Origin: Macrostomum lignano
Lineage: Eukaryota
NCBI GenBank assembly: GCA_002269645.1
Contig: NIVC01000939.1
Location: 248,001-312,000, forward strand
Direction: 5' to 3'
Length of the DNA stretch: 64,000 nt
Made by a program: the position numbers and the translations under genes. Below the pieces are notes generated by a model. It worked only from the letters and a program-made list of their open reading frames with translations, was not told the DNA's origin and searched no databases. Of this stretch, positions 1,365-58,216 are shown piece by piece (within the stretch, counting starts at the first letter, position 1; each line of letters begins with the position of its first letter).

Positions 1365-2065
1365 GGCTGGGCCACTACTCTCCCTGATCCTCAGTTTCTG
1401 GGCCAGCCTTCCAAATCCTCAGTTGCTGGGCCACCCTTCCAAATCCTCAGTTGCTGGGCCACCCTTCCAAATCCTCAGTTGCTGGGCCACCCTTCCAAAT
1501 CCTCAGTTGCTGGGCCACCCTTCCAAATCCTCAGTTGCTGGGCCACCCTTCCAAATCCTCAGTTGCTGGGCCAGCCTTCCAAATCCTCAGTTGCTGGGCC
1601 ACCCTTCCAAATCCTCAGTTGCTGGGCCACCCTTCCAAATCCTCAGTTGCTATGCCACTACTCTCCCTGATCCTCAGTTGCTGGGCCAGCCTTCCAAATC
1701 CTCAGTTGCTGGGCCACTACTCTCCCAGATCCTCAGCTGCTGGGCCACTACTCTCCCAGATCCTCAGTTGCTGGGCCACTACTCTCCCAGATCCTCAGTT
1801 GCTGGGCCACTACTCTCCCTGATCCTCAGTTGCTGGGCCAGCCTTCCAAATCCTCAGTTGCTGGGCCACTGCCTTCCCAGCTCCTCAGTTGCTGGGCCAC
1901 TACTCTCCCTGATCCTCAGTTGCTGGGCCACTGCTCTCCCAGATCCTCAGTTGCTGGGCCACTGCTCTCCCAGATCCTCAGTTGCTGGGCCACTGCTCTC
2001 CCAGATCCTCAGTTGCTGGGCCACTGCTCTCCCAGACCCTCAGTTGCTGGGTCACTGCCTTCCCA
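1365..2065. repeat. Minisatellite, 28/31-bp unit (CAGTTGCTGGGCCACCCTTCCAAATCCT and variants)
   Basis: Direct tandem units, with the variant type changing along the array. It is the source of ORFs 1287-2123. Confidence 0.95.
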
Positions 2066-2159
2066 GCTCCTCGGCTCTGTAAGCTCATACAAATGGTTCG
2101 AAAGACATCCTTCAGACCTCTGAAGGCAGCCGAAATGCCCGCCTTCCCCTCAACTGCAG

Positions 2160-2483: not shown

Positions 2484-2563
<80 letters not shown>

Positions 2564-2588
2564 GCCTGCCTGCCTGTCTGTCTGTCTG

Positions 2589-2622
<34 letters not shown>

Positions 2623-2633
2623 GCCTGCCTGCC

Positions 2634-2709
<76 letters not shown>

Positions 2710-2795
2710 GCCTGTCTGTCTGTCTGTCTGTCTGTCTGTCTGCCTGCCTGTCTGTCTGTCTGTCTGTCTGTCTGTTGTCTGTCTGTCTGTCTGCC

Positions 2796-2857
<62 letters not shown>

Positions 2858-5025
2858 TGTCTGTCTGTTGTCTGTCTGTCTGTCTGTCTGTCTGCCTACC
2901 TATCTGTCTGTCTGTCTGCCTGTCTGTCCGACTGTCTGTCCATCCCTCAATCGCCACCCCTCTCCCCCCAGGTGGCTGGCCGCAAAGGCTTTCCCCACGT
3001 GGTGTACGCGCGCATCTGGCGCTGGCCGGACCTGCACAAGAACGAGCTGCGGCACACCCGCCAGTGCCAGTTCGCCTTTGACCTGAAGCAGGACGCGGTC
3101 TGCGTGAACCCGCACCACTACGAGCGCATCGCCTGCACCGGCCTGGAGCTGTCGTCGCTCAGCCTGGACGAGGACTCCGGGCCCACGGACGATCACGGCG
3201 GCATCGAGGGAATTTCGCCGCCGCTGCCGCCGCTGTTGATGCCGCAGCAACAGTCGGCCGGGGCAGCCGCGGTGGCGAAGCAGACGGCGCTGCCGCCGAT
3301 ACCGCAGCAGCAGCTGTTGTTCTGGTGCAGCATCTCCTACTATGAGCAGACGGAGCGGGTATGACCATTGTTTACTTTAAATTGGGAATAGATCTGAAAG
3401 TAGAAAGCCCTCAACATTTCGGAACTACCCTCCCTCTTGTGTACACACCCCATGGGAAATCCCCTCCCCTTGTGTACACACACCCCATGGGAAATCCCCT
3501 CCCCTGTGTACACACACCCTATGGTAAATCCCTCCCTCTTGTGTACACACCCCATGGGAAATCCCTTCCCCCTTGTGTACACACACCCCATGGGAAATCC
3601 CTTCCCCCTTGTGTACACACACCCCATGGGAAATCCCCTCCCCCTTGCGTTCACACACCCCATGGGAAATCCCTCCCCCTTGTGTACACACACCCCATGG
3701 GGAATCCCTCCCCCTTGTGTACACACACCCCATGGGAAATCCCCACCCCCCTGTGTACACACACCCCATGGGAAATCCCCATCTTTACATAGCACGGAGA
3801 TTTCATCGAACGTTCTCAAATTGTCGGCGAATCACGCCCTTCAGATCGGCGACACATTCAAGGCGCCCTACCAGCAGGCCACGGTCACCATTGACGGCTA
3901 CACGGACCCGTCCTCCAGCCACCGGTTCTGCCTCGGCCAGCTCAGCAACGTGCACCGCAGCGACGTGGCCGAGCGCGCCCGGCTGCACATCGGCAAAGGC
4001 GTCCAACTGAGCCTGGTTGGCGACGGAGACGTCTGGCTGCGGGTCCTCTCCGACCACGCCGTGTTTGTCAGCACCGCCTTCCTGGACCGGGAGGCCGGGC
4101 GGGCGTCTGGCGATCTGGTGCACAAGATTTATCCTGGGACTTACATCAAGGTTGGCGCTGGTTGACCAATAAGAGTTGCGAACTAAATAAGTACATTTAC
4201 TCGTATTAAATTATTTAGTGCATTGGACTATGTGGTTTTTGTGCATGTGTACTGTATTGTATTAGTGCATGTGCACTGTATGGTATTGGTGCATGTGTAC
4301 TGTGTGGTATTGGTGCATCTGTACTGTGTGATATTAGTGCATGTGTACTGTGTGGTTTTGGTGCATGTGTACTATGTGATTTTGGTGCATGTGTACTGTG
4401 TGATATTAGTGCATGTCTACTGTGTGGTTTTGGTGCATGTGTACTGTGTGGTATTGGTGCATCTGTACTGTGTGATATTAGTGCATGTGTACTGTGTGGT
4501 TTTGGTGCATGTGTACTGTGATATTAGTGCATGTGTACTGTGTTGTTTTGGTGCATGTGTACTGTGATATTAGTGCATGTGTACTGTGTTGTTTTGGTGC
4601 ATGTGTACGGCTCTTCTACTATTAGTGCCAAAAAATAATTCAGCAAGTTGATGCTCGAACGCGCAGTTTACGCACGCCCACCTGTGGTCCCGACACCCCG
4701 TCAGGTTTTCGACATTCGCCAGTGCTACTCGGAGATGCGCACCCAGGCTCTCCAGGCCCACCGCGCCTCCCTGGCCACCGCCGCGGCAACCAGCACCTCT
4801 TCGTCCTTCACTTCGCTGCCGGCCGGGCCGCGTCTCCAGGGCGCCGCTGTTGACGAGCTTCGCCGGCGGCTGTGCCAGCTGCGTCTGAGCTTCGTGAAGG
4901 GCTGGGGGCCCGACTACCCGCGCAAGACTATCCGGGAGGCGCCCTGCTGGATTGAAGTGCAGCTGCACCTGCCGCTCAAGCTGCTGGATGACCTGCTGCA
5001 GAGTCTGCCCGTCAGCAACTCCTGA
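2160..5025 (+). CDS. SMAD4: Co-Smad SMAD4/Medea (MH1, short linker, MH2), ~445 aa; N-terminus/start unresolved
   Basis: Exons 2160-2483, 2972-3358, 3845-4150, 4705-5025, all GT-AG phase 0. MH1 [17 protein letters not shown]...RTLDGRLQ|[21 protein letters not shown]; NES-like GLELSSLSL; MH2 [22 protein letters not shown]...[16 protein letters not shown]; Smad4-type L3 loop GWGPDYPR. Confidence 0.96.
2484..2940. repeat. (TCTG)n microsatellite filling SMAD4 intron 1, starting at the GT donor
   Basis: CAG|GTCTGTCTGTCTG... runs to about 30 nt before the acceptor at 2971. Confidence 0.97.
3425..3780. repeat. ~36-bp minisatellite in SMAD4 intron 2
   Basis: CATGGG recurs at 3553, 3589 and 3625. Confidence 0.93.
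4225..4610. repeat. 24-bp minisatellite (GTGCATGTGTACTGTGTGGTATTG) in SMAD4 intron 3
   Basis: GTGCAT recurs at 4265, 4289 and onward. Confidence 0.93.
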
Positions 5026-6224: not shown

Positions 6225-6450
6225 ACTGTCAGATCCCGGAATCTGCTCCCAGACTCAGATCCCGGATGCCGCTCCCAGACTGTCAGATCCCGAATCACCC
6301 TCCACTCCCAGACTCAGATCCCGCTCCCAGACTCAGATCCTGGATCCCGCTCCCAGACTGTCAGATCCCGGATGCCATTCCCAGACTGTCAGATCCCAAA
6401 TCGATCGCACTCCCAGACTGTCAGATCCCGAATTTCTTTCCGATCCCGGA
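6225..6450. repeat. Degenerate minisatellite (CCCAGACTGTCAGATCCCG-type) at the 3' end of the minus-strand ENaC gene
   Basis: Repeated CCCAGACT(GT)CAGATCCC units. Confidence 0.85.
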
Positions 6451-9400
6451 TCTCCCACCTACCAGGCCATTTCTGCTCTCCCCGCTGTCCCCACCCGCGG
6501 GGTGCACGCGCACCGGCTTCAGCGAGCCGGAGACACTCGGCACTTCGAGCGCCTCCTCCGCGGCTCGGTCGGGCGCCGGTGCGCCAGCCGCCCTGCCGGC
6601 GCGGCCGGCCAGCCTGTAGGAGACGAAGCGGCACATGAGGTGCAGCAGCTGCAGCAGCTCCACGAAGGTCATGGCGCTCCAGCCCAGGTACAGGCCGAGC
6701 AGGCCTCCGATCTCGCTCATGACGTTGCTCAGCGCGTACTTGTGCGTCTCGATGATTGACTGCACCGTGTTTGAGTCCGCGCGCACCTGCAGCTTCACGA
6801 AGTTCGAGGTGATGATGCTGCTGAGCTTGTTCAGCAGGCTGAGCTGCGTGGAGTTCATGTCCATCTGGACGCTGTCGAACACCGAATGGTTGAACGGCTT
6901 CATCAGCGCGGCCGCCCCGGAGGTGGTGTTGGCAGCTGGGGCCTCCTGCAGCAGCGCGTCAACCTGCTGAATGTAGCGCAAGCCGTACATCGGCCGGCCG
7001 TACTCGGCCTCCAGCTCCGCCAGCCTGGAGTTGATCATCATCTTCACCATGGACTGAATGTTGCTCTGCAGGGGCCACTTGGTCCCGGTCACCTGGATGG
7101 AGTAGGCCCGCTGCTTGCACTGGCTGCGGCAGCCGCTGGTGTCCGCCCGCTGCGCCACGAACTTCTTTAGCGCGAGGTAGCAGGCGCTGCTGGCCAGGAA
7201 GTTCGGCTGCCGCACGTCCCGGCAGTTGGGCAGGGCGGCGCGCTTGCGGTCGATCTGGGGAGTCAGGTAAGAAATTCAGCTGCCACACCCATCTCCCACA
7301 CCCATCTCCCACACCCATCTCCCACACCCATCTCCCACACCCATCTCCCCACACCCATCTCCCCACACCCATCTCCCACACCCATCTCCCACACCCATCT
7401 CCCACACCCATCTCCCACACCCATCTCCCACACCCATCTCCCCACACCCATCTCCCACACCCATCTCCCACACCCATCTCCCACACCCATCTCTACACAC
7501 CCATCTCCCACACCCATCTCCCACACCCATCTCCACACACCCATCTCCCACACCCATCTCTACACACCCATCTCCCACACCCATCTCCCACACCCATCTC
7601 CCACACCCATCTCCCACACCCATCTCCCACACCCATCTCCCACACCCAGATCCCACACCCATATCCCCAAACCCATCTCATACACCCATCTCCCACACCC
7701 ATATCCCCACACCCATCTCCCACACCCATATCCCCACACCCATCTCCCACACCCATCTCCCACACCCATCTCCCACACCCATCTCCCACACCCATATCCC
7801 ACACCCATATCCCCACACCCATCTCCACACACCTCTTATCTCCCCACACCCATCTCTACACACCCATCTCCCACACCCATCTCCCACACCCATCTCCCCA
7901 CACCCATCTCCCACACCCATCTCCCACACCCATCTCCCACACCCATCTCCCACACCCATCTCCCACACCCATCTCCCACACCTATCTCCCACACCCATCT
8001 CCACACACCTCTTATCTCCCCAAATCCATCTCCCCACACCCATCACCCCACCCATCTTCCCCACATCCATCACCCCACACTCACCGGCATGTTGGGGTCG
8101 CGGCAGCCGCACTGGGCCTGCAGGTAGTCGGCAGCCGCAGAGAGCTCGCAGTCCTGCTTGAGGCCGGTGAAGTTGTACCAGGCCAGGCTGTAGCTCTGGT
8201 TGGCGAGCTGGCGGTACATCTGGTAGCTGACGGTCTCCGTGGCCTCCAAGCAAGGATCCTCGACCTTGTTGATGGCCTTCCGGTGCTGCTCGGTGAAGCC
8301 GATCACACTGCTCTGGCCCGTGCTGGCCATGACCCGGAACACCGGGTGAGCATAGTACTCTGCGGGGCAGGGAGTATACTACTACATGTACTACTACTAC
8401 TACTACTACTCTTACTACTACTACTACTACTACACTACTACTACTACTACTACTACTACTATTGTGACATTATAACACTATCGTGAAACTATTGTGACAC
8501 TATTGTGAAACATTGTGAAATTATTGTGAAACTACTGTGAAATTATTGTGAAATTATTGTGAAACTATTGTGAAATTATTGTGAAACTATTGTGAAACAT
8601 TGTGAAATTATTGTGAAACTACTGTGAAACTATTGTGAAATTATTGTGAAACTATTGTGAAACTATTGTGAAATTATTGTGAAACTATTGTGAAATTATT
8701 GTGAAATTATTGTGAAACTAGCTCGACAAATGGCAGCAGCTCAACTTATACACCCTGGGAGTCGAGCGCCCACTGGGACAAAGGGGTACTCACCAGGAGA
8801 CAGGGGGCACCTAGAAGACAGGGGGCACCTAGGAGACAGGGGGCGCTCACCTAGGAGACAGGGGGCTCACCTAGGAGACAGGGGGCACCTAGGAGACAGG
8901 GGGCACCTAGAAGACAGGGGGCACCTAGGAGACAGGGGGCGCTCACCTAGGAGACAGGGGGCTCACCTAGGAGACAGGGGGCACCTAGGAGACAGGGGGC
9001 GCTCACCTAGGAGACAGGGAGCTCACCTAGGAGACAGGGGGCGCTCACCTAGGAGACAGGGAGCTCACCTAGGAGACAGGGGGCGCTCACCTAGGAGACA
9101 GGGCGCTCACCTAGGAGACAGGGGGCGCTCACCTAGGAGACAGGGGGCTCACCTAGGAGACAGGGCGCTCACCTAGGAGACAGGGGGCGCTCACCTAGGA
9201 GACAGGGCGCTCACCTAGGAGACAGGGGGCGCTCACCTAGGAGACAGGGGGCGCTCACCTAGGAGACAGGGGGCTCACCTAGGAGACAGGGGGCGCTCAC
9301 CTAGGAGACAGGGGGCTCACCTAGGAGACAGGGGGCGCTCACCTAGGAGACAGGGGGCGCTCACCTAGGAGACAGGGGGCTCACCTAGGAGACAGGGGGC

Positions 9401-10337
9401 GCTCACCTAGGAGACAGGGGGCTCACCTAGGAGACAGGGGCACCGAGGAGACAGTAGGGGGGCACATTCAAGTATTGGCACTCCCTGGGGTTGCGGCCCC
9501 TTCAATTGAAATTCGTTCCTACGAATTCCTACAGAGCCTCAGAGCCTCCCCTCGTTGAACGTCTGGCCTGTCACTTTCACTGGGGAGCCAACTTCATGCA
9601 GCTTCAAGAGCTGATGAAGCGCTCTAAAAGCGTCTCCCTCTCTCACCCGGGTGCTTGACGAACAGCACGGCCCCGGAGGAGCGGTCGTACTCCAGCTCGC
9701 CGTTCATGGTGATGGCGGACAGCGGGAAGGCGCCCTCGCTGGCGAAGTACTGTGACAGGTCAGTGGAGCCGATCAGACTCTCGCTGAACAGGATGAAGGT
9801 GACTTCAGTGAAGGTGCGGTTGGGCAGGAACCGGTAGCAGTTCAGGTAGTCCGGGTGATCCACCGGCTCGTAGAACTCGCGGCTGCTGCAATTTCCTCCG
9901 TCGTTGAACTGACAGCTGAACACCAGGGTCTCCGGCCAGATGCCCAGGTACTGCTTGAACTTGTCCCGGCCTACCGTGTGCACCGCGGCCTCAATGTCGA
10001 TTAAGCTGGCCGAGCCGGGCTGCACCGCGTTGTACTGCGCGATGTACTGCACCAGGTGCTGCATGAATGGAGTCATGCCCAGAGCGGCGCTGGTGAAGCT
10101 GATGGGGACATTGTTGCACAGCACCAGCTCCGGAAACGTGACGCTGTCGGAGTTCTTTATGGTTACCACAGTGGGATTGGCCAGGTATTCGTTAACACTG
10201 ATTGTCACCTGGTAGGAGGTGACGGCCAGCAGCGAGGCGCACATCAGCAGCGCCAGGCCCTGCAGGAAGCTCGGCTTGTCGGCGAAGGGCAGGGGAAACG
10301 CGGCGGGGCCAGTCGCTGACTTCTCGGTCGGTTCCAT
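6421..10337 (-). CDS. DEG/ENaC (amiloride-sensitive channel family) subunit A, ~590-630 aa
   Basis: Exons 10337-9647 (phase 1), 8359-8085 (phase 0), 7254-6463. It then either reads on to the stop at 6421 or splices to a terminal exon 6217-6074. TM1 followed by FPELVLCNN; Cys-rich thumb ([21 protein letters not shown]); TKWP; TM2 [20 protein letters not shown]. Confidence 0.9.
7280..8075. repeat. 13-14-bp minisatellite (CACACCCATCTCC) filling ENaC-A intron 2; G-rich on the coding strand
   Basis: About 55 direct units between the donor at 8084 and the acceptor at 7255. Confidence 0.95.
8375..8720. repeat. (TAC)n tract followed by a ~12-bp ATTGTGAAA(CT/TT) minisatellite in ENaC-A intron 1
   Basis: Both arrays are directly visible. 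Confidence 0.9.
8791..9450 (-). repeat. 18-22-bp minisatellite in ENaC-A intron 1; the coding-strand unit reads CCCCCTGTCTCCTAG|GTGAG
   Basis: Plus-strand unit CTCACCTAGGAGACAGGGGG(CG), about 30 copies. Confidence 0.95.
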
Positions 10338-10481
10338 TTCTGCTGACAAGATGAGGCTGAGAAGATGAGGCTTGGCTACTGCAGTGTCAGGTGCAGATGA
10401 TCTGCAAACTCGCGACACGCAGAGCTTTAATACCCCGTCTCAACCGCCGCCAAACTTTGCAATTTGCTGGTTTTTGCACCC

Positions 10482-10496
10482 GTTACCATTGGCAAC
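10482..10496. promoter_or_regulatory. RFX X-box-like motif GTTACCATTGGCAAC, 145 bp upstream of the ENaC-A ATG
   Basis: Matches the GTNRCC(N0-3)RGYAAC consensus. Confidence 0.6.
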
Positions 10497-11086
10497 GGGT
10501 GACTGATTTGCCAAAGTTTGCAGCAGTTTATTTGCCTTATTAGACTGTAGGTAGCAAAAGTTTCATGGACACAATCGGTGAAGCTGTCCGGAAAAGGCCG
10601 GAATTGCATTGTTCCCGGGGTGCATTGTCCGGCTGGTGGGAGCGCTGGCAGCACCCAGGTGCTTCAGTGTGCCCGTGTGAGCTTAATAATAATTAGCTCG
10701 CCGTACTAATTACCCTAATTAATCTGCGCCGGCTCGCGTGTTTGGCCATGCCTCAGTGACCACTTGAGCACCTGTCCTCAGACAGGCAGCTTGATTCTCC
10801 TAGCTGGCCTAGCACAACATCAGGGAGCAGGCAATGTCACCTGAACTGTTTATTCCAGTATCTGCTACAAACACATCCAGATGCTGCATATACTACTGCT
10901 GCACAAGCTTCGCTGGAACTTCATCCAGCTTGCCAATCGTGCGAAGAGATGGCAATTTAGAATGCGACCTGAAATACTTTGGGAACTTGGGAACACACGA
11001 GTGACTGCACTGAGAGCGCAGTTTTACTGCCCAACTGCCAATGCAGCTGAGTGCGTCAATTTATTAACAATTGCACTGAACTGCAC

Positions 11087-11100
11087 GTTGCCATGGAGAC
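11087..11100. promoter_or_regulatory. RFX X-box-like motif GTTGCCATGGAGAC
   Basis: 14-bp near-palindromic X-box form lying between the two ENaC genes. Confidence 0.6.
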
Positions 11101-11361
11101 GCTGCTGTCAAGCCGGAGGGCTTTGAGTTCACAATAAAGCGCTTCCAACCCCCGCAGCGGCGCACTTCCGGGGCAGTGAGGTGACGGATTGGGCCGGCGC
11201 GCGCTTAGCCTCAATTAGTGCGATAAGGGCGGCACGGATCCACCTTGGCGTCAGGCATCCGTTGCACTTTACCAATCTGGAAAGTTTTGCTAGCAGTAGG
11301 TTGAGACAAAGTATTTCTATCCTTAATTTCGCGCAACCAATCGGTTGTAGCTAATGGCGGA

Positions 11362-11375
11362 ATTACCATGGCAAC
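11362..11375. promoter_or_regulatory. RFX X-box-like motif ATTACCATGGCAAC, 100 bp upstream of the ENaC-B ATG
   Basis: One mismatch to the 14-bp X-box with a perfect GGCAAC half-site. Confidence 0.55.
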
Positions 11376-11474
11376 CGCACACTAACAATTGAGAACTCCA
11401 GTAGATTAGAGATCTCCCTAGCCGTCAGAGGTGCAGTCCGTCAGTTTGGTTATTTTCATTCACGGCTTGAAGCA

Positions 11475-13295
11475 ATGCAGGCAGTGCAGGACCGAGTCGT
11501 TGCGATGCCATCAACTACAATGACTGAGACCCCCAGCACCGGAGCGCTGCTGACGCAGGTCCTGGCCGCGGCTGCCAGCGAGACCACAGCCCACGGGCTC
11601 AGCAGGCTGGCGGGCCAGAGGCCGCTCTACATCAAGCTCTGCTGGCTGCTGGCCTTCCTGACCCTGCTCGCTGTGTTCACCTTTAGCATGCACGGCTTCA
11701 CAAGCAAGCTCGTCAGAGGCGAGGTCAGCACTTCCTACGAGGCCGAGGCTGTGGACTTCCAGTTTCCCGACGTGTACTTCTGCAACAATGTCCAGGTGTC
11801 GGGCACCTACTCCGTCACGCTCGTCAGTGAGGTCGTCACCGACATCAACGCCAGGATGACCGCCTCGCTCGCCGCCTTCGACTCGGCGCTGCAACGGCTG
11901 CTCAACTCGTCGCTCGCGAACGCCACCGAGTCTCAAATCGAGCAGATGAAGCTGTACAGACTGAAGTCCGCCATCCAGTCAATGCCGTATAGCTTGCTGG
12001 TGGACCATCTCGCTCACAAGGAGCAGCAGACGGTGCTGAAGAACGACAGCAAGTCGGGCGTCTCCCTCAGACCCTTCTACCACCCGAATCACCTCAAGTG
12101 TCTCAAGGTCGAGCTGACCGAGCAGAGACTCGCTGAGCTGAGCAAGGTCAACTCGGAGATCAGCTTCCAGTTCATTCTGGATCCGCACTTTACCGACTTT
12201 GATGACGCATTGAATATCAGCGTGTATTCACAAGTAATGAGCGTGACGGTCCCGCTGTACAACAAAATACAAATATTCGTGTACGACTGGGACCTGGACT
12301 CGCCCTACGAGATCGACAGGCCGATGGGAATGAGGCTGTACCTGGCTCCTCGAGGCGAGTACCCGAGCAGGTTCGTGACCAACTTCCTGCTCGCTCCCGG
12401 CAGGTCCTACAGCATCGGGCTCAGCATGCAGAGCATCAAGAAGGAGCCCGAGGCGTACGGCGGACGCTGCCTGACGGAGGCTCCCGACGTGCAGTTCGTC
12501 AATCCGTACGACGGCTCGGCGTACGCGTTCGGCTACAGCAACAGCTTCTGCTACTTCTCAGAGTTCGCTCGGCAGCTGTCTGTGAACGGCGGCTGCAGTC
12601 CGTACGTGAACCCGCTGCCGTGGCAGTTCAGGCACCTGCGCTTCTGTCTGAATGCGAGCGGCCTGAACGAGTCTCAGATCGAGTCGAACCTCCTGCAGGC
12701 GTTCACGGCTGACACGGCCGCGCTGAGCGACTTCCAGCAGCTGTGCCAGAGCAGGCAGCTGTGCGTGTCACGGAAGTACGAGACCAGCACCTCCAGCGCG
12801 AACTGGCCCAACGAGAACGGGCAGATCCGGCTTGTCACGGGCATCATGAAGCCCATCTTGGGTGGCTTTCCCTATGTATCGAGACCCGCTTGGAGTGCAA
12901 TATATTCCAATATAATTTACCGCCTTATAATAGAAGGGCCTGACATCTCTGCCGCAGAAGCTCTGGCCAACAAGTTCTTCTCCCGCTCGGGCCTGGAGGT
13001 GACGCTGCGCAGCCAGGAGACGCGCAGCTCGCAGATCCGGCTGTCGCCCGGCTACTCTCTGCAGACGTTCATCGCCGACATTGGCGGCACTGCGGGCATC
13101 TACCTCGGCTGCAGCCTGCTGAGCCTGTGCGAGCTCGTCGAGCTGCTGTACAACCTGATCACCAAGACCGGGGGGCAGCGAAGCTCCAGCAACATCGTCC
13201 GCGTGAGGCCCGCGCCACCGATGGGCAGCAGCTCGGGCACGCCGGACTGTAGCGAGGTGGAGCTGGGCGACAAGACGGCCGAAAAGGCAGCTTGA
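11475..13295 (+). CDS. DEG/ENaC subunit B, intronless, 606 aa
   Basis: Single ORF with pre-TM1 TTAHG, TM1 with W, FPDVYFCNN, Cys-rich thumb, ANWP, and TM2 ADIGGTAGIYLGCSLLSLCE. Confidence 0.93.
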   Translation: MQAVQDRVVAMPSTTMTETPSTGALLTQVLAAAASETTAHGLSRLAGQRPLYIKLCWLLAFLTLLAVFTFSMHGFTSKLVRGEVSTSYEAEAVDFQFPDVYFCNNVQVSGTYSVTLVSEVVTDINARMTASLAAFDSALQRLLNSSLANATESQIEQMKLYRLKSAIQSMPYSLLVDHLAHKEQQTVLKNDSKSGVSLRPFYHPNHLKCLKVELTEQRLAELSKVNSEISFQFILDPHFTDFDDALNISVYSQVMSVTVPLYNKIQIFVYDWDLDSPYEIDRPMGMRLYLAPRGEYPSRFVTNFLLAPGRSYSIGLSMQSIKKEPEAYGGRCLTEAPDVQFVNPYDGSAYAFGYSNSFCYFSEFARQLSVNGGCSPYVNPLPWQFRHLRFCLNASGLNESQIESNLLQAFTADTAALSDFQQLCQSRQLCVSRKYETSTSSANWPNENGQIRLVTGIMKPILGGFPYVSRPAWSAIYSNIIYRLIIEGPDISAAEALANKFFSRSGLEVTLRSQETRSSQIRLSPGYSLQTFIADIGGTAGIYLGCSLLSLCELVELLYNLITKTGGQRSSSNIVRVRPAPPMGSSSGTPDCSEVELGDKTAEKAA

Positions 13296-14554
13296 GGAAT
13301 TCTCGGATTTGACAACCCGATCTCCAACTGTTTACGATATTGTTCCGCGAGTATTGACTCTCCTGACGTTTATTTCATCTTTTAGAGCTCTCATCGGTCT
13401 CTTGTTTGCGAATATTTTATGCAGTTTAAGTTATCACTTTATTAAATATTTCTTGTTTCGAATAGCTCCTCTCTTTCCGTTGTCTATTCTTCTTTGAGCT
13501 TGGATGAGTTTTCATCAGCTTCTGTCGGTGTCTTTAAAGCTGCTGTAGCTGGGGCGAGCCGCCTGGAAGCTTCAGTGCCTGAGCCTGATCCCTTCGGTTC
13601 GTGCCGCGCAATCTGCTGAGCGAGCGAGTAGTGCTGAGCCATCTGGTGCGGGCGGGCAGCCATCTGCTCCGTTTTCCCTCTCCTTGCGATTTGGCTCTTC
13701 GTTTGCCCCTTGGGGTAAGGGACAGGCGCAGACTCTGTCCAACTGTTTGTGAATCGCATGTGAAAGTGCGAAAACTTCACCTCTCATTAGGCGACTGGGT
13801 CACTTAGGACTAGACTCGCTTGGCAGTGGATCTCTTACCTTCTTGGTACAATGTACATCAGCGCAGAGTGCCAAGCTCTGGTGCGGACGTCTGCAGACTG
13901 TTTTTCTCTTAGGGCTCTCTTTGCCAGGGCAGTAGACGTTGTTGCGTGAGTGCTTCTCTGTGTCCAGCGAGGCGTCCCTTATTTGGATCCTGTAGGCCTC
14001 ACAGAGGAAGGCATGGATGTTGCTCAGCAAATTCATTCCCCTTTGCCTGACCGAAGAGATGAATGAGGCTGAGTGGATGGGGAGCTTCAGCTACTGAGAG
14101 TAGCCAGCGTGGCAACCTACGAGTAATTCTCGGCGGGTGGAAGAGGCATGGACTTCGGTGCCAGTGTGGACTGTGAGTGGACATCCCTCTAAAATAGCGC
14201 AGCCTACAGTGAAAGGCGTGCCCTTCACGTGAAGGGTCCTGTGCCCTTGCGCGTCCTGTACGTGACTTGATGTAAGCCGCTGGCGTCTGAGGAATTCACG
14301 TCTGAGGAATTGGGAGAACTCACATCTGGTATCTGACTCCTCATCCTCTGTTGCCGCATGAGACGGCTTTTCAGAGCACATTAATTCGGTTTCTGACTGG
14401 TTCAACACCCGTCAACACTCAAGCGAAATAGCTTGAGGAGTCTAGCAGGGCGCCTGGCTGCAGGTCCGTCGCTGCTCCGTGGCTGGCTCAGTGGCTTCGA
14501 CCTCAGTCTTAACCCAGCATGTTACTAACCTCAGTAGTGTGTTCCGCAAAGGTT

Positions 14555-17983: not shown

Positions 17984-19165
17984 GTCGCATTGCATGAAAA
18001 GTCCCAGAGGAACAATGACTCTTTCTGGAGCTTCTTAACAGTATATGAAAATCTTTGAGATCTTTGAAATCTTAGTGTATGAAAAACTTTCTTGAAGCTC
18101 AGTAGATTTTCTGAAACAATTGTACCAGCTTTGAAGATCTGTCAATTCACTCAGCCATCTGGCTGGCGGTTTGAAATGCAGTTTGTCAAGCTGCCTGTTC
18201 ATTGTCTGCCTGTCTGTCTCAATGCCATTCAACACACAAAACCGTTCATTTGGCTATATAAGCGTATACTGACGGCTCAAGACTATTCATTTGGCAGCCA
18301 CTACTACGCTGGATCGATATTCAGTCCAGACAAGGGCAGGGCCGATCCCCACCAGTCTAAAATGCTTGCGGTGCCGAACCAACCAACCAGACTTTTCGCT
18401 TGCGGCAGCAGCTTCCTGGTTAAGTCACCCTGCCAAACAGTGCAGAGGTGGCGATCCCAGAGAGCTTATGCAAGTTTTATTTTTTAATCCTGCAGTCCCG
18501 CAGAAAGAAATGAAATTTTAACACAGAAATTGGACAAAAACAGCGATGATTAGCATGGCTGAGGCTGCGAATTGTGCAGCCAATCGATGCGCGAAAGCGG
18601 TTTTATTTTGTGGCATTTCCGACACTCCAACACAGCGCGCAGGAAGGTGCTTATTAAAAAATTGTTTTTTGTTTAGAAGCCGGCTGCGGTCGATGCGCTG
18701 ACATTTCCCTCAGGTCCGGGGCAGTAAATTTTGCGCAGAAACTGGCTGTTAAATCGGGATTACACCGGAATCAACCTTCATAAGTCGGACAGAACCAACA
18801 CGACTGAACTAGAAGAACCATCCTATGATTGATGCAGGGACCTAAGCAAGTTTTCAAATCAGTCCTATAATAGATGAGACCTAAGAGTAAGCAGGATGAA
18901 GCATTTCAAAGCGCGAACTCGAAAGGGATTAAAGCTCTTTGAAAAAATTCGAATGGGGTACAAGATGAAGCTGGAAACTCGTGGTAGGGTGCGAGCTCTG
19001 GTCTAATAGAAAATTAGGCGCTTTGTAACTCTTTGTACCAATATAAATATAAGACATTCAATCCTGGCCTGTTGTACGGACAGCTTAAGATAAGGCGCTT
19101 GCAGTTACACGCAGAATAAAAAAGCCAATGGCGAAAGTAAAAAGTTTGTTAATATGCTGGACAGT

Positions 19166-22100
19166 CTAGAAAACATTGGACTTCTTTCTTGGCTGCAGCA
19201 GCACCGCTGCCATCTGCTCCAGAAGCTCCCGTTGCTGTCGCAGCTCCTCGCCCTGATCGTCCAGCCAGTTTGCTGCGGCCTCCTGGCGCCGAATCACCTC
19301 GGCCAGCTGCTGCTGCATAGCCGCGCCCTCCTGGCTGAAGTCCTCCGGTTCCAGACCGACACCGTCTAGCTTAGGTCGCAGCTTGCGCAGCGTCACGGAC
19401 TGGTAGAACAGGTAGAACAGATATACAAAGTTGCGCTGGTTCTGCACCAGCACTTCGATCAAGGAGCGGCGACCGCTGCGGCGGCGGCAGCAGGAGAGAC
19501 GAGACAGAAGCCACATCAGAAAGTTGCGGGTCTCCAGCAGAATATTTAGCGGGGCTGGCAGGGCGGAGCGCTTGAAGAACTCCTGGTTGAGGTCGTATCG
19601 CTCAAACAGCCACAAAGACTTTGACTCGGAGTCCACCATGTCGATGGTTTTGCTAAACATGGCCACGATGACGTTCAGAAGAAGAACCTGCACAATGACG
19701 ATGTAGGCCACCATCAGTACGTACGGCACCAGCACGTTTCCGGGCGACTCCACGCACTTCTCCACTGAGTCCTCGGCCTCACCGCTTGTCTCATTTCTCT
19801 TGCACACGTTCTGCATATCGTCGAGGCCGTATTCGCCTGCATGGAAGGCAAAATGCAGTTTAACTTAATATAACACCAACTACCATTCAATTACAAACGC
19901 AAAATTTATCTGCATTTTTTTCTAAGGTTACAAGAAACGTCCCAAAGCCAATAATGAATGACTTAACTGACATGTAGACAAACTGTAACAAAAATCCTGG
20001 TACCTAGTTCAGTATACCTTGCATGTGCATGTAGATGCGTCATCGAAATTGATTCTGGTTGGCCCCCTAAACTCACCGACGATCGTGTAGAAGGTTCGAT
20101 GAAACATTTCGATGAGGATATCGTAGGCGGGCAGCTGGATAGCCTTCCCGTTGCTGCCGATGTATTGACCGTTCGGCCAGAGCAGGGCATGGAATGCGAT
20201 GCCAAAGCCCAGCATGATGACGAAAAGGATGTATAAAAAGGGAATGAAGTCTTTCTTGATCATCAGCGACAGCATCTTCAGTTTGACGCCCACCGACTCC
20301 AGCACAATCGAGATGAACAATATGCGGATCCAGAAGATCAGGGTGGTAACGACGATTAAGATGTAGCACATGTCCTGCGCAGCCTTGCCGTGGCCAATGA
20401 CGTACGTGGACAGGCGAGATGCGGGGCTGAACTGCCTGGTGACGAAAGCCAGGAAGCCACATGATATGGCTACCAGGTCGATGGCGTTCCACCCGTCTGA
20501 TATGTAGACTAGCAGCGTCTCCTCCTCGCAAGCTGCAATCATCTCTCGCAACTCTTCAACGAAGATTCCAAGCAGGGCAAAGTAGCAGAAAATCTCCGTG
20601 CTACTGGCGGTGCCTTGGAAGTCGTGCAGGATCATGTAGGACAGCAGGCTCACAAAGACAAAGTAAAATATGGCGTGCAGGCGGAACTTCACACAGGGAG
20701 TGTTGTAGAACAGCAGCATCTCCTTCATGTAGTCCACGGCACGCACCAGCAGGCCATTGTGGCGGTGTGGCCTGTGGGCTTCATCCTCTTCGGTTGCCAG
20801 CTTGTTCTTTTTGCCAGAAACTGGCAGCAGTTGCACGAGCTCCTGTGCCTTCTCTGGAGCTTCCGTGTCGTTCTGTAAAATAGCAGCATTGCAGACAGTC
20901 TCAACTGGGTCATTGAGAACCGTCTCGAGGAAGCTGCGCGTGCCGGGGCGCCGATAGCGTTTGATGAGGCGCGGCAGAAGCAGCATGAACGGAGGCAAGA
21001 AGCCAGACACAATGACCAGCTCGCGCGTGAGGACGCTGCTAAAATCGAAGAAGTCGCCGTACCAATTTTTGTCCGTAGCCAACTCCACGATGTCCAGCTT
21101 GATGAATTCGCTTGCGCAGCCTCGGGCCGAGAGATCCAGGATGTTATAGCCGGCATAGTTCGGCAATGGTAGGCTGACGTAGCTAATGGTAAGACTGTTG
21201 TTTGGCGAGTTGTCCACTTCCTTGACCTCTTTAATGACCTGGATGGCCATGCCCTCGCAGATTTCCGCGACTCGACCGGCTTTGTCGACGAAGACGTCCT
21301 CGATGTCACGCCGACGGCTGAGTGAACGCAGTACGGTCGTGGCGAGCAGAGCTAGCGGTACCAGATCGAACTCCTCTTGGCGAAGCAGAGTGGGCACGAG
21401 TCTCAGGCGCCCAGTAAGGATGGCCCACATTACGAGCGACTGTAGAGGGTCTCGCATTGGTCGCTTATGGCAGCTACTGTCCGGGTTGTCGCTACAGCTG
21501 TCTTGCATGTCAAACATGAGGGGACGCTTGCTGAAGGACCAATAGGATGTAATTCTAGCCAGAAACTTGTTCATCTTGACAAAGTCGATTTTCACACCGC
21601 TCTCGTCGGTGCAGTTACGACGCAGCAGCTCGCGCACTCCAGCCTTCATTTTGCGCAGCGCCTTGGCATAGAGATGGTCGATGCTTAACTCGATGTGGCG
21701 AGACAGAGATGACCAGAGGCTGCGATTTGCTACAAGGCGCTGCAAAAGTGGCTCATTCTGTGGGAACAGTACCAGCTGCACCACCTTCCAGGCGGCGCGA
21801 CAAAGTATTCCTGAGCTCTCCAGATCCGCGCGAAGCCCAGCATTGAAAGCCTCCTGCAGCTCGCGAATCAAACGGTCGGCATCCACTTTTCTCTTGGTGA
21901 TGACGGACTCCAGCATCTCCAGTTGCATGCACCGATCCGCTTCTCTGATCTGCACGGCCAACTTTGAGCTGCAGAGACCGTCAATGTGCAGCAAGTGGTC
22001 CAGGTAAGCGCCACCTTCGCGGGAGCTGACAATCTGAGCCATGTTCTCGGCGTTGACAAAGTGACGCAGGTCGCGGATGATCTGCCGGCCGAGGCAATCA

Positions 22101-22744
22101 ATGCCGGAAGTGTCGCCAGTCTCAGTCAGAAGGTCGATAGCTGTTTTTCCGTTGGCATCCATCACATTGAAGTCGGCCCCGTGCCGCAGCAGCAGCGCCA
22201 GCAGTTCCGGATTCTCGCACAGGGCGGCAATGTGGAGCGGCGTGTTGCCACTTGCATTTTGCTGGTTGACGAACTCCGGGCCAGCCTTCACAACAAGTCG
22301 CGCCGCGTGACAGTCCTCAGCAAAGCAGGCCACGTGGAGCGCCATATCACCGTAGGCATCCTCGAAGCTGCAGTCGGCATCGTGGCTCAGAAGCTCACGA
22401 ACTATTTCCAGCTGCTTGGCTGCCACCGCCAGGTGCAGAGGCGTCTCCTTGGCCTGGTTGGTGGCGTTAACGTCGGCGCCGCGGTCCAGCAGCAGGCGCA
22501 GACAAGCAAGTTTATCGCTACGCGCGCACACGTGCAGCACCGAGTCCCCGTTGCGCGCCCGAGCTCCGATTTCAGCCCCAGCGTCCAGGAGCCGGCCCAG
22601 CGCGTCCAGAGAGCCTTCGGCGGCAGCAGCGTGAATCAGGCGACGACCGTTGGTGGCGTCGGCCAGGCCGTTTGGCGTTACTCCCGGTGATGCCATGAAG
22701 TCCGCCAGGGTGACCGTCGGCTCGTTCACTGCAAGACGGTCCAT
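19166..22744 (-). CDS. TRP cation channel with TRPM-type body and N-terminal ankyrin repeats, ~1112 aa
   Basis: Exons 22744-20077 and 19836-19166 (phase-1 GT-AG intron). Five full ANK repeats (e.g. ETPLHLAV, NTPLHIAA); MHR4-like PLQSLVMWAIL...EGMAIQVI...YNILDLS...NWYG; S1-S6; pore GEYGLDD; LLLNVIVAMFS; TRP helix WLFERY...LPAPL; C-terminal coiled coil. Confidence 0.92.
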
Positions 22745-23689
22745 GGCTGCGCTTTATCTCTGCGTGTCAGCCTGTGCTGCGGCTAAATCAGTTTTAATTT
22801 ATAAACTAATTGCAGGTCTTCGAGTGTCTCTTCTGCTATTAGACTTCAGGCACTGGCTATCGGGCGTTTCCACCAGCGAACCCTCCAACTTGCCTGCCAG
22901 TGGCCAGCCAGATCAGCCCGGGTTTCCTCCAAGTCCCGGGGATTGGCGGCCTTGCGTATGGCTGCCTGCACTCCGCAATACTCCCTCTGTCCGGGAGCAG
23001 GCCAGCAGGCAAGGCACTGCCTGCAGAGGGAATCTGGAGGGGAAGGCAGCGACCAGTCGGGCCAGGGCTGAACGCGAAATCGATAGTGCAAAGACAAGGG
23101 GGCGCTGCGGAGCTGCCTGGCCAGGGAGCGCTAGTATTAAAACTGTCCGTGAATGATGGAGCACGCAAGAGGCTGGTCCTGGGAATCCCGGGACCCCGCC
23201 GCACTCCCAGTCCCATCCATTCCCCCCAGGTGGGATGAAGGTGAAAAAACTTCGAGCTTCAAATTGGCCTGAGGGCAAGAAGTGCAGACGATACAGCAGA
23301 CAGCAAAAATCCTGTGCGCAAAAGGTTAGAAGACACTTTATATTGCCCGACAGTTTATTAGTCCAAACTGCCTACTGACAGTAGATGACATAGTGTGTTA
23401 TATAAGCTCCAGCGTCTCCGAAAATTATTAAAATTTCATAACAAGTGCAGTGTAATTAATGGGCCTACCACTTTTGACCATGGACTACTCAAGTAGAAGG
23501 ACGGCCGGTACTGCGTTTCTTGTAACATTTTAGGAGGCAGGTTTTTTCCGAAAAATACACTACGGAGATGGGAAGTTTTTTGCACAAAAATTGTTAATGC
23601 TTTTGATAGGAAGCAGACCCAATGTTCATCTTTTGATATGTTGTGCCTCTCTTATAGCTCTATTGACATTTGTAAAGCTTTTCGTTTAG

Positions 23690-32890: not shown

Positions 32891-34402
32891 GCTCAGCCTC
32901 AATTACTGATTCGCTGTGCTCTGCGTTTGGCTGCAGCAGCAGCTCCAGTTTCTCTTGCAATGTTGATGCACCAGAGTGCATTACCACGCATTGCCCCTGT
33001 TGCTATGGCAACCATGCACCGCCGCTTTGGCATCTCGGCCGCCCTGCTGAAGGCCAAGAAGAAGACCCAGCAACAGAAGCACGCAGCTTCTGCTCCCGCC
33101 GCTGCTGCCACCGAGATTGTCAGCAACCCGGAGCTGCTGGAGCGGCTGGAGCTGGACAAGCTGACGGCCAGAGGGCAGGCCGAGCTGGCCAGCTTCAAGG
33201 AGCTGCTGTTCCGCAACCTGCGGCTGCAGATCACCGCGGATGTCCTGCACGACATTGAGGTGGGTTGTTGAAATTTCGTTTCTTAAAAAATATTTTCAAG
33301 GCTGGCTTCGCGCGAAAAATATTGCATGGGAATATCCCTGTTCTTCACACAGCCTGAAGCTAATTTTGTCAGGAAATCAATCCCTGTTCTTCACACAGCC
33401 TGAAGCCAATTTTGTCAGGAAATCAATCCCTGTTCTTCACACAGCCTGAAGCCAATTTTGTCAGGAAATCAATCCCTGTTCTTCACACAGCCTGAGGCCA
33501 ATTTTGTCAGGAAATCAATCCCTGTTCTTCACACAGCCTGAGGCCAATTTTATCAAGAAATCAATCCCTGTTCTTCACACAGCCTGAAGCCAATTTTGTC
33601 AGGAAATCAATCCCTGTTCTTCACACAGCCTGAAGCCAAATTTGTCAGGAAATCAATCCCTGTTCTTCACACAGCCTAAAGCCAATTTTGTCAGGAAATT
33701 AGCTGCAATTTTAAATTTGAATTTGCGTCCCCGCACTGAACCCGCGCGAGTCCCCCCCCTGCTTCCTGTAAATAAACAGGATTTGAAAATGAAAACTGCG
33801 GCTCCAATATTCTAAAGCGTATTTTTGCATAAAGTCAGTCTTCAAAGATTTTTTAAGAAGCGAGAGTTCTTGTCACTATTCAATCCGTCTTGCTACATCT
33901 CCGATAGAGGCTGAGGCTGTTAATCCGCCAACCCGATCGCCCCTCCCAGGTGAGCACCGGCAGCGGCCGGGTGCCTCTCGGCAGTCTGGCTGACGTCTAT
34001 CAGAAGTCCTCGGATACATTAGTCCTTGACCTGACAGCCAACCGGTCCGCAGTGCCGGCCGTCAGACAGGCCCTGGCGTTGAAGGGCTTCAACGGCCGGG
34101 AGCAGGCGGCCGACGCCGACTGCCTGACTGTGAGCCTCCCGCGCGTCACTGGCGAGCACCGGCGCCGTCTGGCAGCCAACGGGCGCGAGCTGCTGCACCG
34201 CGCCAAGCTCGCCACTAAGCGGCTGCACGACAGCGCCACCAAGCGGCTGAAGGAGGCGGAACGGGCCGGGCACTACTCCAAAGATGACCTGCGCGCCTGC
34301 CAGCAGCTGCTGGTGGCTGAAATCAAGCGGGCCAACGCGCAGCTGGACTCCGCCTGGGCTGCCAAGGAGAAGGAGCTGCTGGGCACCGGCACCAGCGACT
34401 GA
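32891..34402 (+). CDS. MRRF: Mitochondrial ribosome recycling factor
   Basis: Exons 32891 (first ATG 32960)-33259 and 33950-34402, phase 0. Basic, non-acidic presequence; RRF motifs VPLGSLADVYQKSSDTLVLDL, SLPRVTGEHRRRL, YSKDDLRACQQLL. Confidence 0.85.
33335..33700. repeat. 46-bp minisatellite (~8 copies) in the MRRF intron
   Basis: AATCAATCCC at 33375, 33421, 33467 and onward. Confidence 0.95.
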
Positions 34403-48104: not shown

Positions 48105-54310
<6,206 letters not shown>

Positions 54311-57260: not shown

Positions 57261-57724
57261 AGAACAAATGACTAAAGACTAACTGATCATCGCTTGTTGC
57301 GTTTTTTGCATACATTTACTTTGTCATACTTTAATGATTCGGCTACTCTATAAAAAGCATTTGCTCGTATTGGGGCACTATTTACACCCCAAATTACATT
57401 TTTGCATGTACTCGTATCAATTTTAATTGCAATTAATTTCTCTATTCCTTTTTTCTACTATTTTTGTATTTTCTATGCATTTAGCGAAATCTGTCTACAA
57501 ATTAATGTCTGTAATATATAATGTAATATATAATGTCTACTTAAATGTATCTTGAAGCAATGTCCATATCCATAGCTAACTACCGTACTATTTTTCAATG
57601 CATAGTTGCTCGTAATAATGACGGATCTGCTACTATTGACAATCATTAAGCAGCAGTTTTAATTAATGTATATGCTTAATTTTATCATTGTGTAGTACTT
57701 TGCATTCCGAATCGTGTATATATA

Positions 57725-58216
<492 letters not shown>

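What the first reader, a model, noticed from the sequence alone, without database searches (positions are those of the whole stretch)
10337..11475. Head-to-head DEG/ENaC pair sharing a 1.1-kb region with three RFX X-boxes
Seen: two divergent DEG/ENaC paralogues have ATGs 1137 bp apart. X-box-like motifs occur at 10482, 11087 and 11362; the outer two lie 145 and 100 bp from the respective ATGs. Known: RFX/DAF-19 activates ciliary and sensory-neuron genes via X-boxes typically close to the start, and DEG/ENaCs often form heterotrimers. Inference: a bidirectional RFX-driven promoter co-expresses two subunits of one channel in ciliated sensory cells.
Basis: partly seen in the sequence, partly recalled or inferred. 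Interest (0 to 1): 0.72.

Follow-up and report, generated by a model that had tools for sequence, protein, structure and literature searches.

The report
X-box cluster between two flatworm sodium-channel genes
Two unannotated, very different DEG/ENaC ion-channel genes of the flatworm Macrostomum lignano sit head to head, and the 1.1 kb between them holds three well-formed RFX binding sites, which makes them good but untested candidates for genes switched on in ciliated cells.

Summary
A 606-aa intronless DEG/ENaC gene (11475-13295, +) and a 599-aa three-exon DEG/ENaC gene (10337-6421, -) have ATGs separated by 1137 bp. X-box motifs lie at 10482-10496, 11087-11100 and 11362-11375. The outer two are 145 and 100 bp from their ATGs.

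The cluster is not chance. Published X-box definitions give about 0.9 sites per 64 kb in dinucleotide shuffles, and no shuffle out of 300 put three within 1137 bp.

The window is Macrostomum lignano: a neighbouring TRP-like gene is 98% identical to Mlig004154g2. A second genomic copy of the locus keeps all three X-boxes. The leftmost one lies in an indel-rich stretch, and its only change is A to G at the R position of the consensus.

- The two proteins are deeply divergent members of different subfamilies, not recent paralogues.
- Each gene has its own proximal X-box, so back-to-back promoters fit better than one shared core.
- M. lignano has a multiciliated epidermis, so sensory cells are not the only candidates.
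- Co-expression, RFX dependence and heteromer formation could not be tested.
- Neither gene is annotated, the + gene evolves fast (dN/dS about 0.55), and its second copy carries a frameshift.

This is a plausible new member of a well-known kind of promoter.

The parts
11475..13295 (+). DEG/ENaC gene A: intronless CDS, 606 aa. It has the pre-TM1 HG motif (TAHGLSRL) and a GCS selectivity-filter motif in TM2.
   Evidence: ORF. Pfam ASC 8e-36 over profile positions 3-455. PDB hits to FaNaC, ENaC and ASIC. Closest relatives are M. lignano proteins at 27-34% identity. Motifs seen.
9647..10337 (-). DEG/ENaC gene B, exon 1: ATG at 10337, very short N-terminus, TG in place of HG, then TM1 and the start of the extracellular domain.
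   Evidence: ORF and GT donor at 9646. Pfam ASC 8e-10. 98% identical in the second copy, dN/dS 0.17.
8085..8359 (-). DEG/ENaC gene B, exon 2.
   Evidence: AG acceptor and GT donor; joins in frame. Weak ASC match to profile positions 249-321.
6421..7254 (-). DEG/ENaC gene B, exon 3: end of the extracellular domain, TM2 with a GWS motif, C-terminus and stop.
   Evidence: AG acceptor; in frame. ASC 1e-13 to profile positions 354-454. TM2 alignment.
10338..11474 (.). 1137-bp spacer between the two ATGs. It presumably holds both promoters.
   Evidence: Read directly. It is not repeated anywhere else in about 190 kb of sequence held, most of it M. lignano. No Rfam family or tRNA.
10482..10496 (.). 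X-box 1, GTTACCATTGGCAAC: 15 bp with a 3-nt spacer, 145 bp from the ATG of gene B. Its centre is also a CCAAT box on the - strand.
   Evidence: The second copy has GTTGCCATTGGCAAC, a consensus-preserving A>G change, inside a stretch with 10% substitutions and 21% gap columns.
11087..11100 (.). X-box 2, GTTGCCATGGAGAC (GTCTCCATGGCAAC on the - strand): 375 bp upstream of the ATG of gene A and 750 bp from that of gene B.
   Evidence: Perfect match to GTHNYYATRRNAAC. Identical in the second copy.
11362..11375 (.). X-box 3, ATTACCATGGCAAC: 100 bp upstream of the ATG of gene A. A good CCAAT box (AACCAATCGG, CCAAT at 11337-11341) lies 20 bp upstream of it.
   Evidence: One mismatch to GTTRCCATGGYAAC. 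Fits RTNRCC N1-3 RGYAAC. Identical in the second copy. CCAAT positions.
10827..11474 (.). Indel-free block upstream of gene A that holds X-boxes 2 and 3.
   Evidence: 3.7% substitutions and 2 gap columns in 648, against 4-6% substitutions and 5-10% gap columns in neighbouring non-coding DNA, and 10% plus 21% in the left half of the spacer.
10686..10722 (.). Cluster of three TAATTA (homeodomain-type) cores. Only the middle one is kept in the second copy.
   Evidence: CTAATTA occurs 3 times in the spacer. Alignment.

Best explanation
In Macrostomum lignano, two deeply divergent and so far unannotated DEG/ENaC channel genes lie head to head. The 1137-bp spacer carries three RFX-type X-boxes. Each gene has one in the classical promoter-proximal position, 100 and 145 bp before its ATG. 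A third lies between them, on the side of gene A.

The most likely mechanism is that dimers of a flatworm RFX1/2/3-type factor bind these palindromes and activate two back-to-back promoters. Both channel genes would then be transcribed in RFX-positive, ciliated cells. In this animal those could be the multiciliated epidermis, ciliated sensory receptors or other ciliated epithelia.

Shown here: the genes, the motifs, their non-random clustering, their positions, and their retention in a second genomic copy.

Inferred: RFX binding, activation rather than repression, the cell type, and co-expression. That the two products assemble into one channel is speculation.
For: - Both genes are DEG/ENaC with intact reading frames and a GxS filter motif.
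- The three X-boxes match published consensus definitions (definitions quoted in bioRxiv 10.1101/2022.11.11.515474, and PMC2375033).
- A cluster of 3 in 1137 bp occurred in 0 of 300 shuffles. Eight other loci (79.7 kb) hold one weak site.
- The outer sites fall in the 60-160 bp window upstream of the ATG that is typical of validated C. elegans X-boxes (PMC551537). All three lie within 500 bp of an ATG, as do all validated nematode sites, and 15-bp X-boxes are functional there (PMC3245922).
- All three sites are kept in contig NIVC01000290.1. The leftmost shows only an R-preserving change although its surroundings are riddled with indels. The chance of 14 or more of 15 identical columns is about 0.04 at the local 71% column identity.
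- RFX DNA-contact residues and the motif are conserved across animals. RFX motifs mark core promoters of multiciliated-cell genes (PMC5245798). The M. lignano epidermis is multiciliated (PMC7053086).
- Peripheral DEG/ENaC (ASIC) expression tracks ciliation in other bilaterians, and flatworms have lost ASICs proper (PMC9949801).
Against: - There are no expression, binding or perturbation data of any kind.
- Neither gene is in the public M. lignano protein sets, and no gene is called at the second copy.
- Gene A evolves almost as fast as non-coding DNA (4.7% substitutions, dN/dS 0.55). Its second copy has a 1-nt deletion in a CCC run.
- Six loci of M. lignano homologues of gene A, and two loci of relatives of gene B, have no X-box. 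The link is therefore not a family trait.
- X-box 1 doubles as a CCAAT box.
- The second copy is too close (4-6% neutral divergence) for conservation to say much about X-boxes 2 and 3.
- A perfect X-box also sits inside a coding exon of an unrelated mitochondrial RRF-like gene at 32999, so good motifs do occur without an obvious ciliary link.
- A match to the most degenerate X-box consensus alone is a poor predictor of RFX dependence in flies (PMC2375033).
Confidence: 0.5

Rival explanations
1. Only gene A is an RFX target. X-boxes 2 and 3 belong to its conserved 650-bp upstream block. The site 145 bp before gene B acts as a CCAAT/NF-Y box or is neutral, and gene B is regulated independently. 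On this reading there is no shared or coordinated control.
For: X-boxes 2 and 3 both lie in the indel-free block next to gene A, whereas the half of the spacer next to gene B is very poorly conserved. X-box 1 has the less common 3-nt spacer, and its centre reads GCCAATGG on the strand of gene B.
Against: Both half-sites of X-box 1 (GTTRCC and GGCAAC) are intact. The site fits the strictest published definitions on both strands. It is an island of identity in a divergent stretch, and its one change improves the palindrome. 15-bp X-boxes are functional in C. elegans (PMC3245922).
Confidence: 0.17
2. The motifs are bound by RFX, but not to drive ciliated-cell expression. They would act as repressor or tuning sites, or in a non-ciliary RFX programme.
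For: A distal X-box represses F25B4.2 in C. elegans. Human RFX1/3 repress MAP1A through two X-boxes, and yeast RFX is a repressor (PMC3245922). Several RFX family members have non-ciliary roles (PMC2375033).
Against: Promoter-proximal, near-palindromic sites at about -100 are the signature of activating ciliary X-boxes in nematodes and of multiciliated-cell core promoters.
Confidence: 0.13
3. The sites have no present function. They are chance or relic palindromes next to genes that are weakly expressed or decaying, and their retention between copies only reflects the youth of the duplication.
For: The genes are absent from public annotations. Gene A has dN/dS 0.55, and its second copy has a frameshift. 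Neutral divergence between the copies is only 4-6%. A perfect X-box occurs in an unrelated coding exon.
Against: Three consensus-grade sites in 1.1 kb never arose in 300 shuffles. Two sit at canonical distances from two different ATGs. Exon 1 of gene B is under clear purifying selection (dN/dS 0.17). The window's copy of gene A is intact, and the deletion in the other copy lies in a homopolymer run of a long-read assembly, so it could be an assembly error.
Confidence: 0.2

Closest known systems
DAF-19/RFX X-box promoters of C. elegans ciliary genes (che-2, osm-6, bbs genes, xbx genes)
   Same: Near-palindromic 14-15-bp motif of the same consensus, placed about 100 bp upstream of the ATG of a gene. 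Several sites per promoter occur there too (PMC551537; PMC3245922).
   Different: Here the flanking genes are DEG/ENaC channels in a flatworm, and two genes face away from one spacer. Nothing has been tested functionally. No paper in the searched library links an X-box to a DEG/ENaC gene.
Drosophila dRfx targets that encode ciliary ion channels (the TRPV gene CG4536/osm-9 in chordotonal neurons)
   Same: RFX sites upstream of an ion-channel gene that works in sensory cilia (PMC2375033).
   Different: The channel family differs (TRPV, not DEG/ENaC). In flies the sites were validated by conservation over 40-60 Myr and by expression in dRfx mutants.
Core promoters of vertebrate multiciliated-cell genes bound by Rfx2 with Foxj1
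   Same: The X-box is the dominant core-promoter motif, and a probable bidirectional promoter (Cep290) is described (PMC5245798). M. lignano has a multiciliated epidermis.
   Different: I did not test formally for Fox motifs in the spacer. The targets there are structural or motility genes, not channels.
Adjacent, co-regulated DEG/ENaC subunit genes (Drosophila ppk11/ppk16; human SCNN1B/SCNN1G neighbours). From my own knowledge, not checked here.
   Same: Genes for subunits of one DEG/ENaC channel can be neighbours and co-regulated.
   Different: Those pairs are tandem or co-transcribed, not head to head, and they are not known to be RFX-driven. Heteromer formation is unknown here.
MHC class II S-X-Y promoter module (RFX5 complex on the X box, NF-Y on the CCAAT Y box)
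   Same: An X-box next to a CCAAT box: 11337-11341 and 11362-11375, and again within X-box 1.
   Different: RFX5 and its partners are vertebrate-specific (PMC2375033). The order and spacing do not match. I rejected this as a model.

Membership tests
DEG/ENaC (Pfam ASC, PF00858) | Significant match to the family profile across the protein | tested here: met
   Gene A: 8e-36 over profile positions 3-455. Gene B: exons match profile positions 26-183, 249-321 and 354-454. PDB relatives are FaNaC, ENaC and ASIC.
DEG/ENaC (Pfam ASC, PF00858) | G/S-x-S selectivity-filter motif in TM2 and the conserved GG before it | tested here: met
   Gene A has DIGGTAGIYLGCSLL and gene B has [15 protein letters not shown].
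DEG/ENaC (Pfam ASC, PF00858) | Pre-TM1 His-Gly gating motif | tested here: inconclusive
   Gene A has TAHGL. Gene B has SATGP (Thr for His) after only 7 residues. Some relatives have NG. No upstream exon encoding HG was found in the spacer.
DEG/ENaC (Pfam ASC, PF00858) | Forms a trimeric Na+-permeable channel | not testable with these tools
   Needs expression and electrophysiology.
RFX-regulated X-box promoter | Match to the X-box consensus (GTNRCC N0-3 RGYAAC, GTHNYYATRRNAAC, or GYTRYY/RTNRCC N1-3 ...) | tested here: met
   All three sites fit at least one restricted published definition.
RFX-regulated X-box promoter | Position close to the start of the gene (within about 500 bp, typically about 100 bp, of the ATG or TSS) | tested here: met
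   The sites lie 145, 375 and 100 bp from the nearest ATG. The transcription start sites themselves are unknown.
RFX-regulated X-box promoter | Occurrence beyond chance | tested here: met
   0 of 300 shuffles gave 3 or more sites in 1137 bp. Low background in 79.7 kb of other loci.
RFX-regulated X-box promoter | Conservation of the site at the orthologous locus of a diverged species | tested here: inconclusive
   Only a second M. lignano copy (4-6% neutral divergence) could be read, and all three sites are kept there. Only X-box 1 sits in sequence divergent enough to be informative (p about 0.04). No sister-species genome was reachable.
RFX-regulated X-box promoter | RFX binding, and RFX-dependent expression in ciliated cells | not testable with these tools
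   Needs ChIP or EMSA, RNAi, reporters and in situ hybridisation.
Bidirectional promoter | Divergent transcription start sites less than 1 kb apart with a shared core or regulatory region | tested here: inconclusive
   The ATGs are 1137 bp apart. The start sites and any trans-splicing are unknown. Each gene has its own proximal X-box, and the two halves of the spacer evolve very differently.
Bidirectional promoter | Correlated expression of the two genes | not testable with these tools
   No expression data are available. Neither gene is annotated.

The most novel reading that the evidence does not exclude
The spacer is a true RFX-dependent bidirectional module. It co-expresses two anciently diverged DEG/ENaC subunits, one with the HG gating motif and one with TG and almost no N-terminus. 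The two would assemble into an obligate heteromeric channel on cilia of the flatworm epidermis or sensory receptors. That channel would take over the peripheral, cilia-associated role that ASICs play in other bilaterians and that flatworms lost.
Probability: 0.1. Interest if true: 0.6.

Novelty: new member of a known kind. Interest (0 to 1): 0.37.

Why it matters
If the sites work, they give a compact, sequence-defined handle on ciliated-cell gene expression: 1.1 kb and three mutable palindromes. M. lignano is a flatworm in which transgenesis and RNAi are established, so the idea is directly testable.

It would also add DEG/ENaC channels to the list of RFX targets. That fits the proposal that peripheral DEG/ENaC channels are tied to ciliated cells across bilaterians.

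The analysis also uncovers two intact-looking channel genes that are missing from the public annotation.

It would not change how RFX, X-boxes or DEG/ENaC channels are understood.

Tried and rejected
1. The search for homologous proteins with gene A alone, and with an alignment that included its M. lignano relatives, scored nothing. The word index was swamped. The full HMMER search was needed.
2. I tested whether the two promoter halves are an ancient inverted duplication. Several short inverted matches are collinear, but the best local alignment scores 50 against 38.7 +/- 6.6 in shuffles, and 21 of 300 shuffles reach it. I rejected this as not significant.
3. I looked for X-boxes upstream of homologues: six M. 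lignano loci (L001-L006) and two ENA/Logan loci (L007, L008). None was found, so there is no family-wide link. These are distant paralogues, not orthologues.
4. The syntenic contig NIVC01003136.1 (L009) turns into a run of 4337 N about 400 bp beyond gene A and could not be used. The other copy (L010) could.
Gene A is not on record.
6. I asked whether the 25-nt palindrome around X-box 1 (10477-10501) is a longer element. Its right extension is not kept in the second copy, so only the X-box core and its left flank look constrained.
7. I searched for an upstream HG-encoding exon of gene B in the spacer and found none.
8. I asked whether the spacer is a repeat or transposon. It has no other copy in about 190 kb of sequence held, most of it M. 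lignano.
9. Rfam and tRNA scans found nothing in the window.
10. The MHC-II S-X-Y analogy was rejected because RFX5 is vertebrate-specific.
11. Literature searches for X-box or RFX together with degenerin or ENaC found no paper that links them.


Full report
**What is in the sequence**

The + strand carries an uninterrupted ORF, 11475-13295 (606 aa). It matches the Pfam ASC (DEG/ENaC) profile end to end (E = 8e-36). It also hits solved FaNaC, ENaC and ASIC structures, including the pre-TM1 'AHGL' motif and TM2.

On the - strand an ATG at 10337 opens an exon that ends at a GT donor (exon 10337-9647). Two further exons, 8359-8085 and 7254-6421, have AG/GT borders and join in frame to a 599-aa protein. 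Every exon matches successive parts of the ASC profile. The introns are filled with tandem repeats.

**The motifs**

The three sites are at the stated coordinates:
- 10482-10496 GTTACCATTGGCAAC
- 11087-11100 GTTGCCATGGAGAC
- 11362-11375 ATTACCATGGCAAC

Each fits at least one restricted published X-box definition:
- GTNRCC N0-3 RGYAAC, as quoted in bioRxiv 10.1101/2022.11.11.515474
- GTHNYYATRRNAAC (recalled from memory as the Efimenko et al. definition, not checked in a paper here)
- GYTRYY N1-3 RRHRAC and RTNRCC N1-3 RGYAAC, from PMC2375033

The outer sites lie 145 and 100 bp from their ATGs. That is inside the 60-160 bp window used for C. elegans X-box genes (PMC551537).

**Is it more than chance?**

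I took the union of the published definitions and ran 300 dinucleotide-preserving shuffles of the window.
- Shuffles gave 0.93 sites per 64 kb on average.
- None had three sites within 1137 bp, and four had two.
- Leaving aside a minisatellite that repeats a weak 13-mer, the window holds only four other sites in about 60 kb. Eight other loci (79.7 kb, six of them M. lignano) hold one weak site.
- GTTRCCAT occurs three times in the spacer against 0.14 expected from the window's own density.

The cluster is real.

**Whose genome**

The best relatives of gene A among 1.84 billion representative proteins are Macrostomum lignano proteins, but at only 27-34% identity. The non-ankyrin part of a TRP-like channel encoded at 20009-22744 is 98% identical to M. 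lignano BOX15_Mlig004154g2. Two contigs of assembly GCA_002269645.1 are collinear with the window at 91-98% nucleotide identity.

So the window is M. lignano, from another assembly, allele or duplicate region. The species has a recent whole-genome duplication and a multiciliated epidermis, and transgenesis is established in it (PMC7053086).

**The two genes are not close paralogues**

phmmer gives only 31 bits between them, and tblastn does not connect them at E <= 1e-3. Gene A groups with one set of M. lignano proteins. Gene B groups with a different set of unnamed ENA/Logan proteins.

Both keep the GxS motif of TM2. Gene A has HG, while gene B has TG after only seven residues.

Neither gene is present in the public protein collections. 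No gene is called at the corresponding place of contig NIVC01000290.1.

**A second copy of the locus**

Contig NIVC01003136.1 becomes a run of N just beyond gene A. Contig NIVC01000290.1 (L010) covers window 9153-13821. All three X-boxes are present there.

X-boxes 2 and 3 are identical, but they lie in a block (10827-11474) that has 3.7% substitutions and almost no indels. Their identity therefore says little.

X-box 1 lies in the badly conserved half of the spacer (10% substitutions, 21% gap columns). It shows a single A>G change at the R position of GTTRCC, which makes the palindrome perfect. The longer 25-nt palindrome around it is not kept. At the local 71% column identity, 14 or more of 15 identical columns has a probability of about 0.04. 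That is modest support for constraint.

Comparison of the two copies:

| Region | Substitutions | dN/dS | Note |
|---|---|---|---|
| Gene B exon 1 | 2.0% | 0.17 | No gaps |
| Gene A CDS | 4.7% | 0.55 | 1-nt deletion in a CCC run in L010 |

The deletion in the L010 copy could be a long-read homopolymer error or a real frameshift.

**Other content of the spacer**

The spacer holds six CCAAT boxes against 2.9 expected. One is the centre of X-box 1, and a good one (AACCAATCGG) lies 20 bp upstream of X-box 3. It also holds four TAATTA homeodomain-type cores, of which only one is conserved.

Short collinear inverted matches between the two promoter-proximal regions do not add up to a significant alignment.

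The spacer is not a repeated element, and it contains no known RNA family.

**How it most likely works**

RFX DNA-binding residues and the motif are conserved across animals and beyond. X-boxes at about -100 drive ciliary genes in nematodes. They mark core promoters of multiciliated-cell genes in vertebrates, and they control at least one ciliary ion-channel gene in flies.

The economical reading has two parts:
- Two back-to-back X-box promoters, each with its own proximal site.
- A third site that may boost or tune expression of gene A, since distal X-boxes can even repress.

On this reading both channel genes are switched on in RFX-positive ciliated cells. In M. lignano that could be the epidermis as well as sensory receptors.

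Peripheral ASIC expression follows ciliation in other bilaterians, and flatworms have lost ASICs (PMC9949801). That gives the idea some biological appeal.

Everything beyond the sequence facts is inference. Heteromer formation has no support at all.

**What speaks against it**

- There is no evidence of expression.
- Gene A evolves fast and may be broken in the other copy.
- Distant homologues have no X-boxes.
- X-box 1 can also be read as a CCAAT box.
- A perfect X-box sits inside a coding exon of an unrelated mitochondrial RRF-like gene at 32999-33012.
- The fly work warns that a match to the most degenerate X-box consensus does not predict RFX dependence without conservation.

**Verdict**

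- Observation: confirmed.
- Interpretation: partly supported. RFX sites are likely. 'One bidirectional promoter', 'two subunits of one channel' and 'sensory' are unsupported.
- Kind: a new candidate member of a well-known class of promoters. It involves a channel family that the searched literature does not link to X-boxes.
- Interest: moderate. It is easily testable in a transgenic flatworm but not surprising.
- No step had to be referred.

Noticed in passing
window 1366-2072: A minisatellite (31-bp unit, about 24 copies) carries the weak X-box-like 13-mer GTGGCCCAGCAAC (1-nt spacer) in 17 of its units (16 as written, one as GTGACCCAGCAAC). It lies just upstream of, or inside, a SMAD4-like gene (MH1 at about 2340-2490, MH2 at about 3830-4160). 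It inflates naive X-box counts and is probably meaningless.
   Followed up: partly
window 32999-33012: A perfect palindromic X-box, GTTGCTATGGCAAC, lies about 40 bp downstream of the ATG (32961) inside the first coding exon of a mitochondrial ribosome-recycling-factor-like gene. It encodes VAMAT. The RRF domain is found in the next exon, 33950-34402. Either chance or an intragenic RFX site.
   Followed up: partly
window 19166-22744 (- strand): A TRP-like cation channel with N-terminal ankyrin repeats, a weak TRPM2-like domain match and an ion-transport domain. It is 98% identical to M. lignano Mlig004154g2. This match identified the species. No X-box lies upstream of it.
   Followed up: partly
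L010 (NIVC01000290.1), position corresponding to window 12082-12083: The second genomic copy of gene A lacks one C of a CCC run (CDS position 608), which shifts the frame. Neither DEG/ENaC gene is called on that contig. Either an assembly error or an incipient pseudogene after the whole-genome duplication.
   Followed up: partly
L009 (NIVC01003136.1) 18863-23199: This syntenic contig reads as 4337 N from about 400 bp beyond the stop of gene A to the end of the fetched locus. It is either a scaffold gap or a masked stretch, and it prevented a three-way comparison.
   Followed up: no
window 7283-8080, 8477-8720, 8789-9454: Both introns of gene B consist largely of tandem repeats, with units of 13, 11 and 20-22 bp and 20-60 copies each. 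(GTCT)n-type and similar microsatellites are very common all over the window (2484-2940, 46.9-48.1 kb, 53.1-53.4 kb, 57.7-58.2 kb).
   Followed up: no
window 10686-10722 and 11206-11211: A cluster of TAATTA homeodomain-type cores sits in the middle of the spacer. Only ACTAATTA (10709-10716) is kept in the second copy.
   Followed up: partly
window 41436-42479 (-), 49878-50480 (-), 28978-29955 (-): Other genes in the window are a rhodopsin-family GPCR (7tm_1, 5e-41), a bestrophin fragment and a KH-domain protein. ORFs at 55057-56055 and 57714-58760 have no Pfam match and lie among repeats, so they may derive from mobile elements.
   Followed up: no
window 62709-62723: Another 15-bp X-box-like site with a 3-nt spacer and a CAAT centre, GTTATCAATGGTAAC, lies in AT-rich sequence near the window end. 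No recognisable gene is next to it.
   Followed up: no
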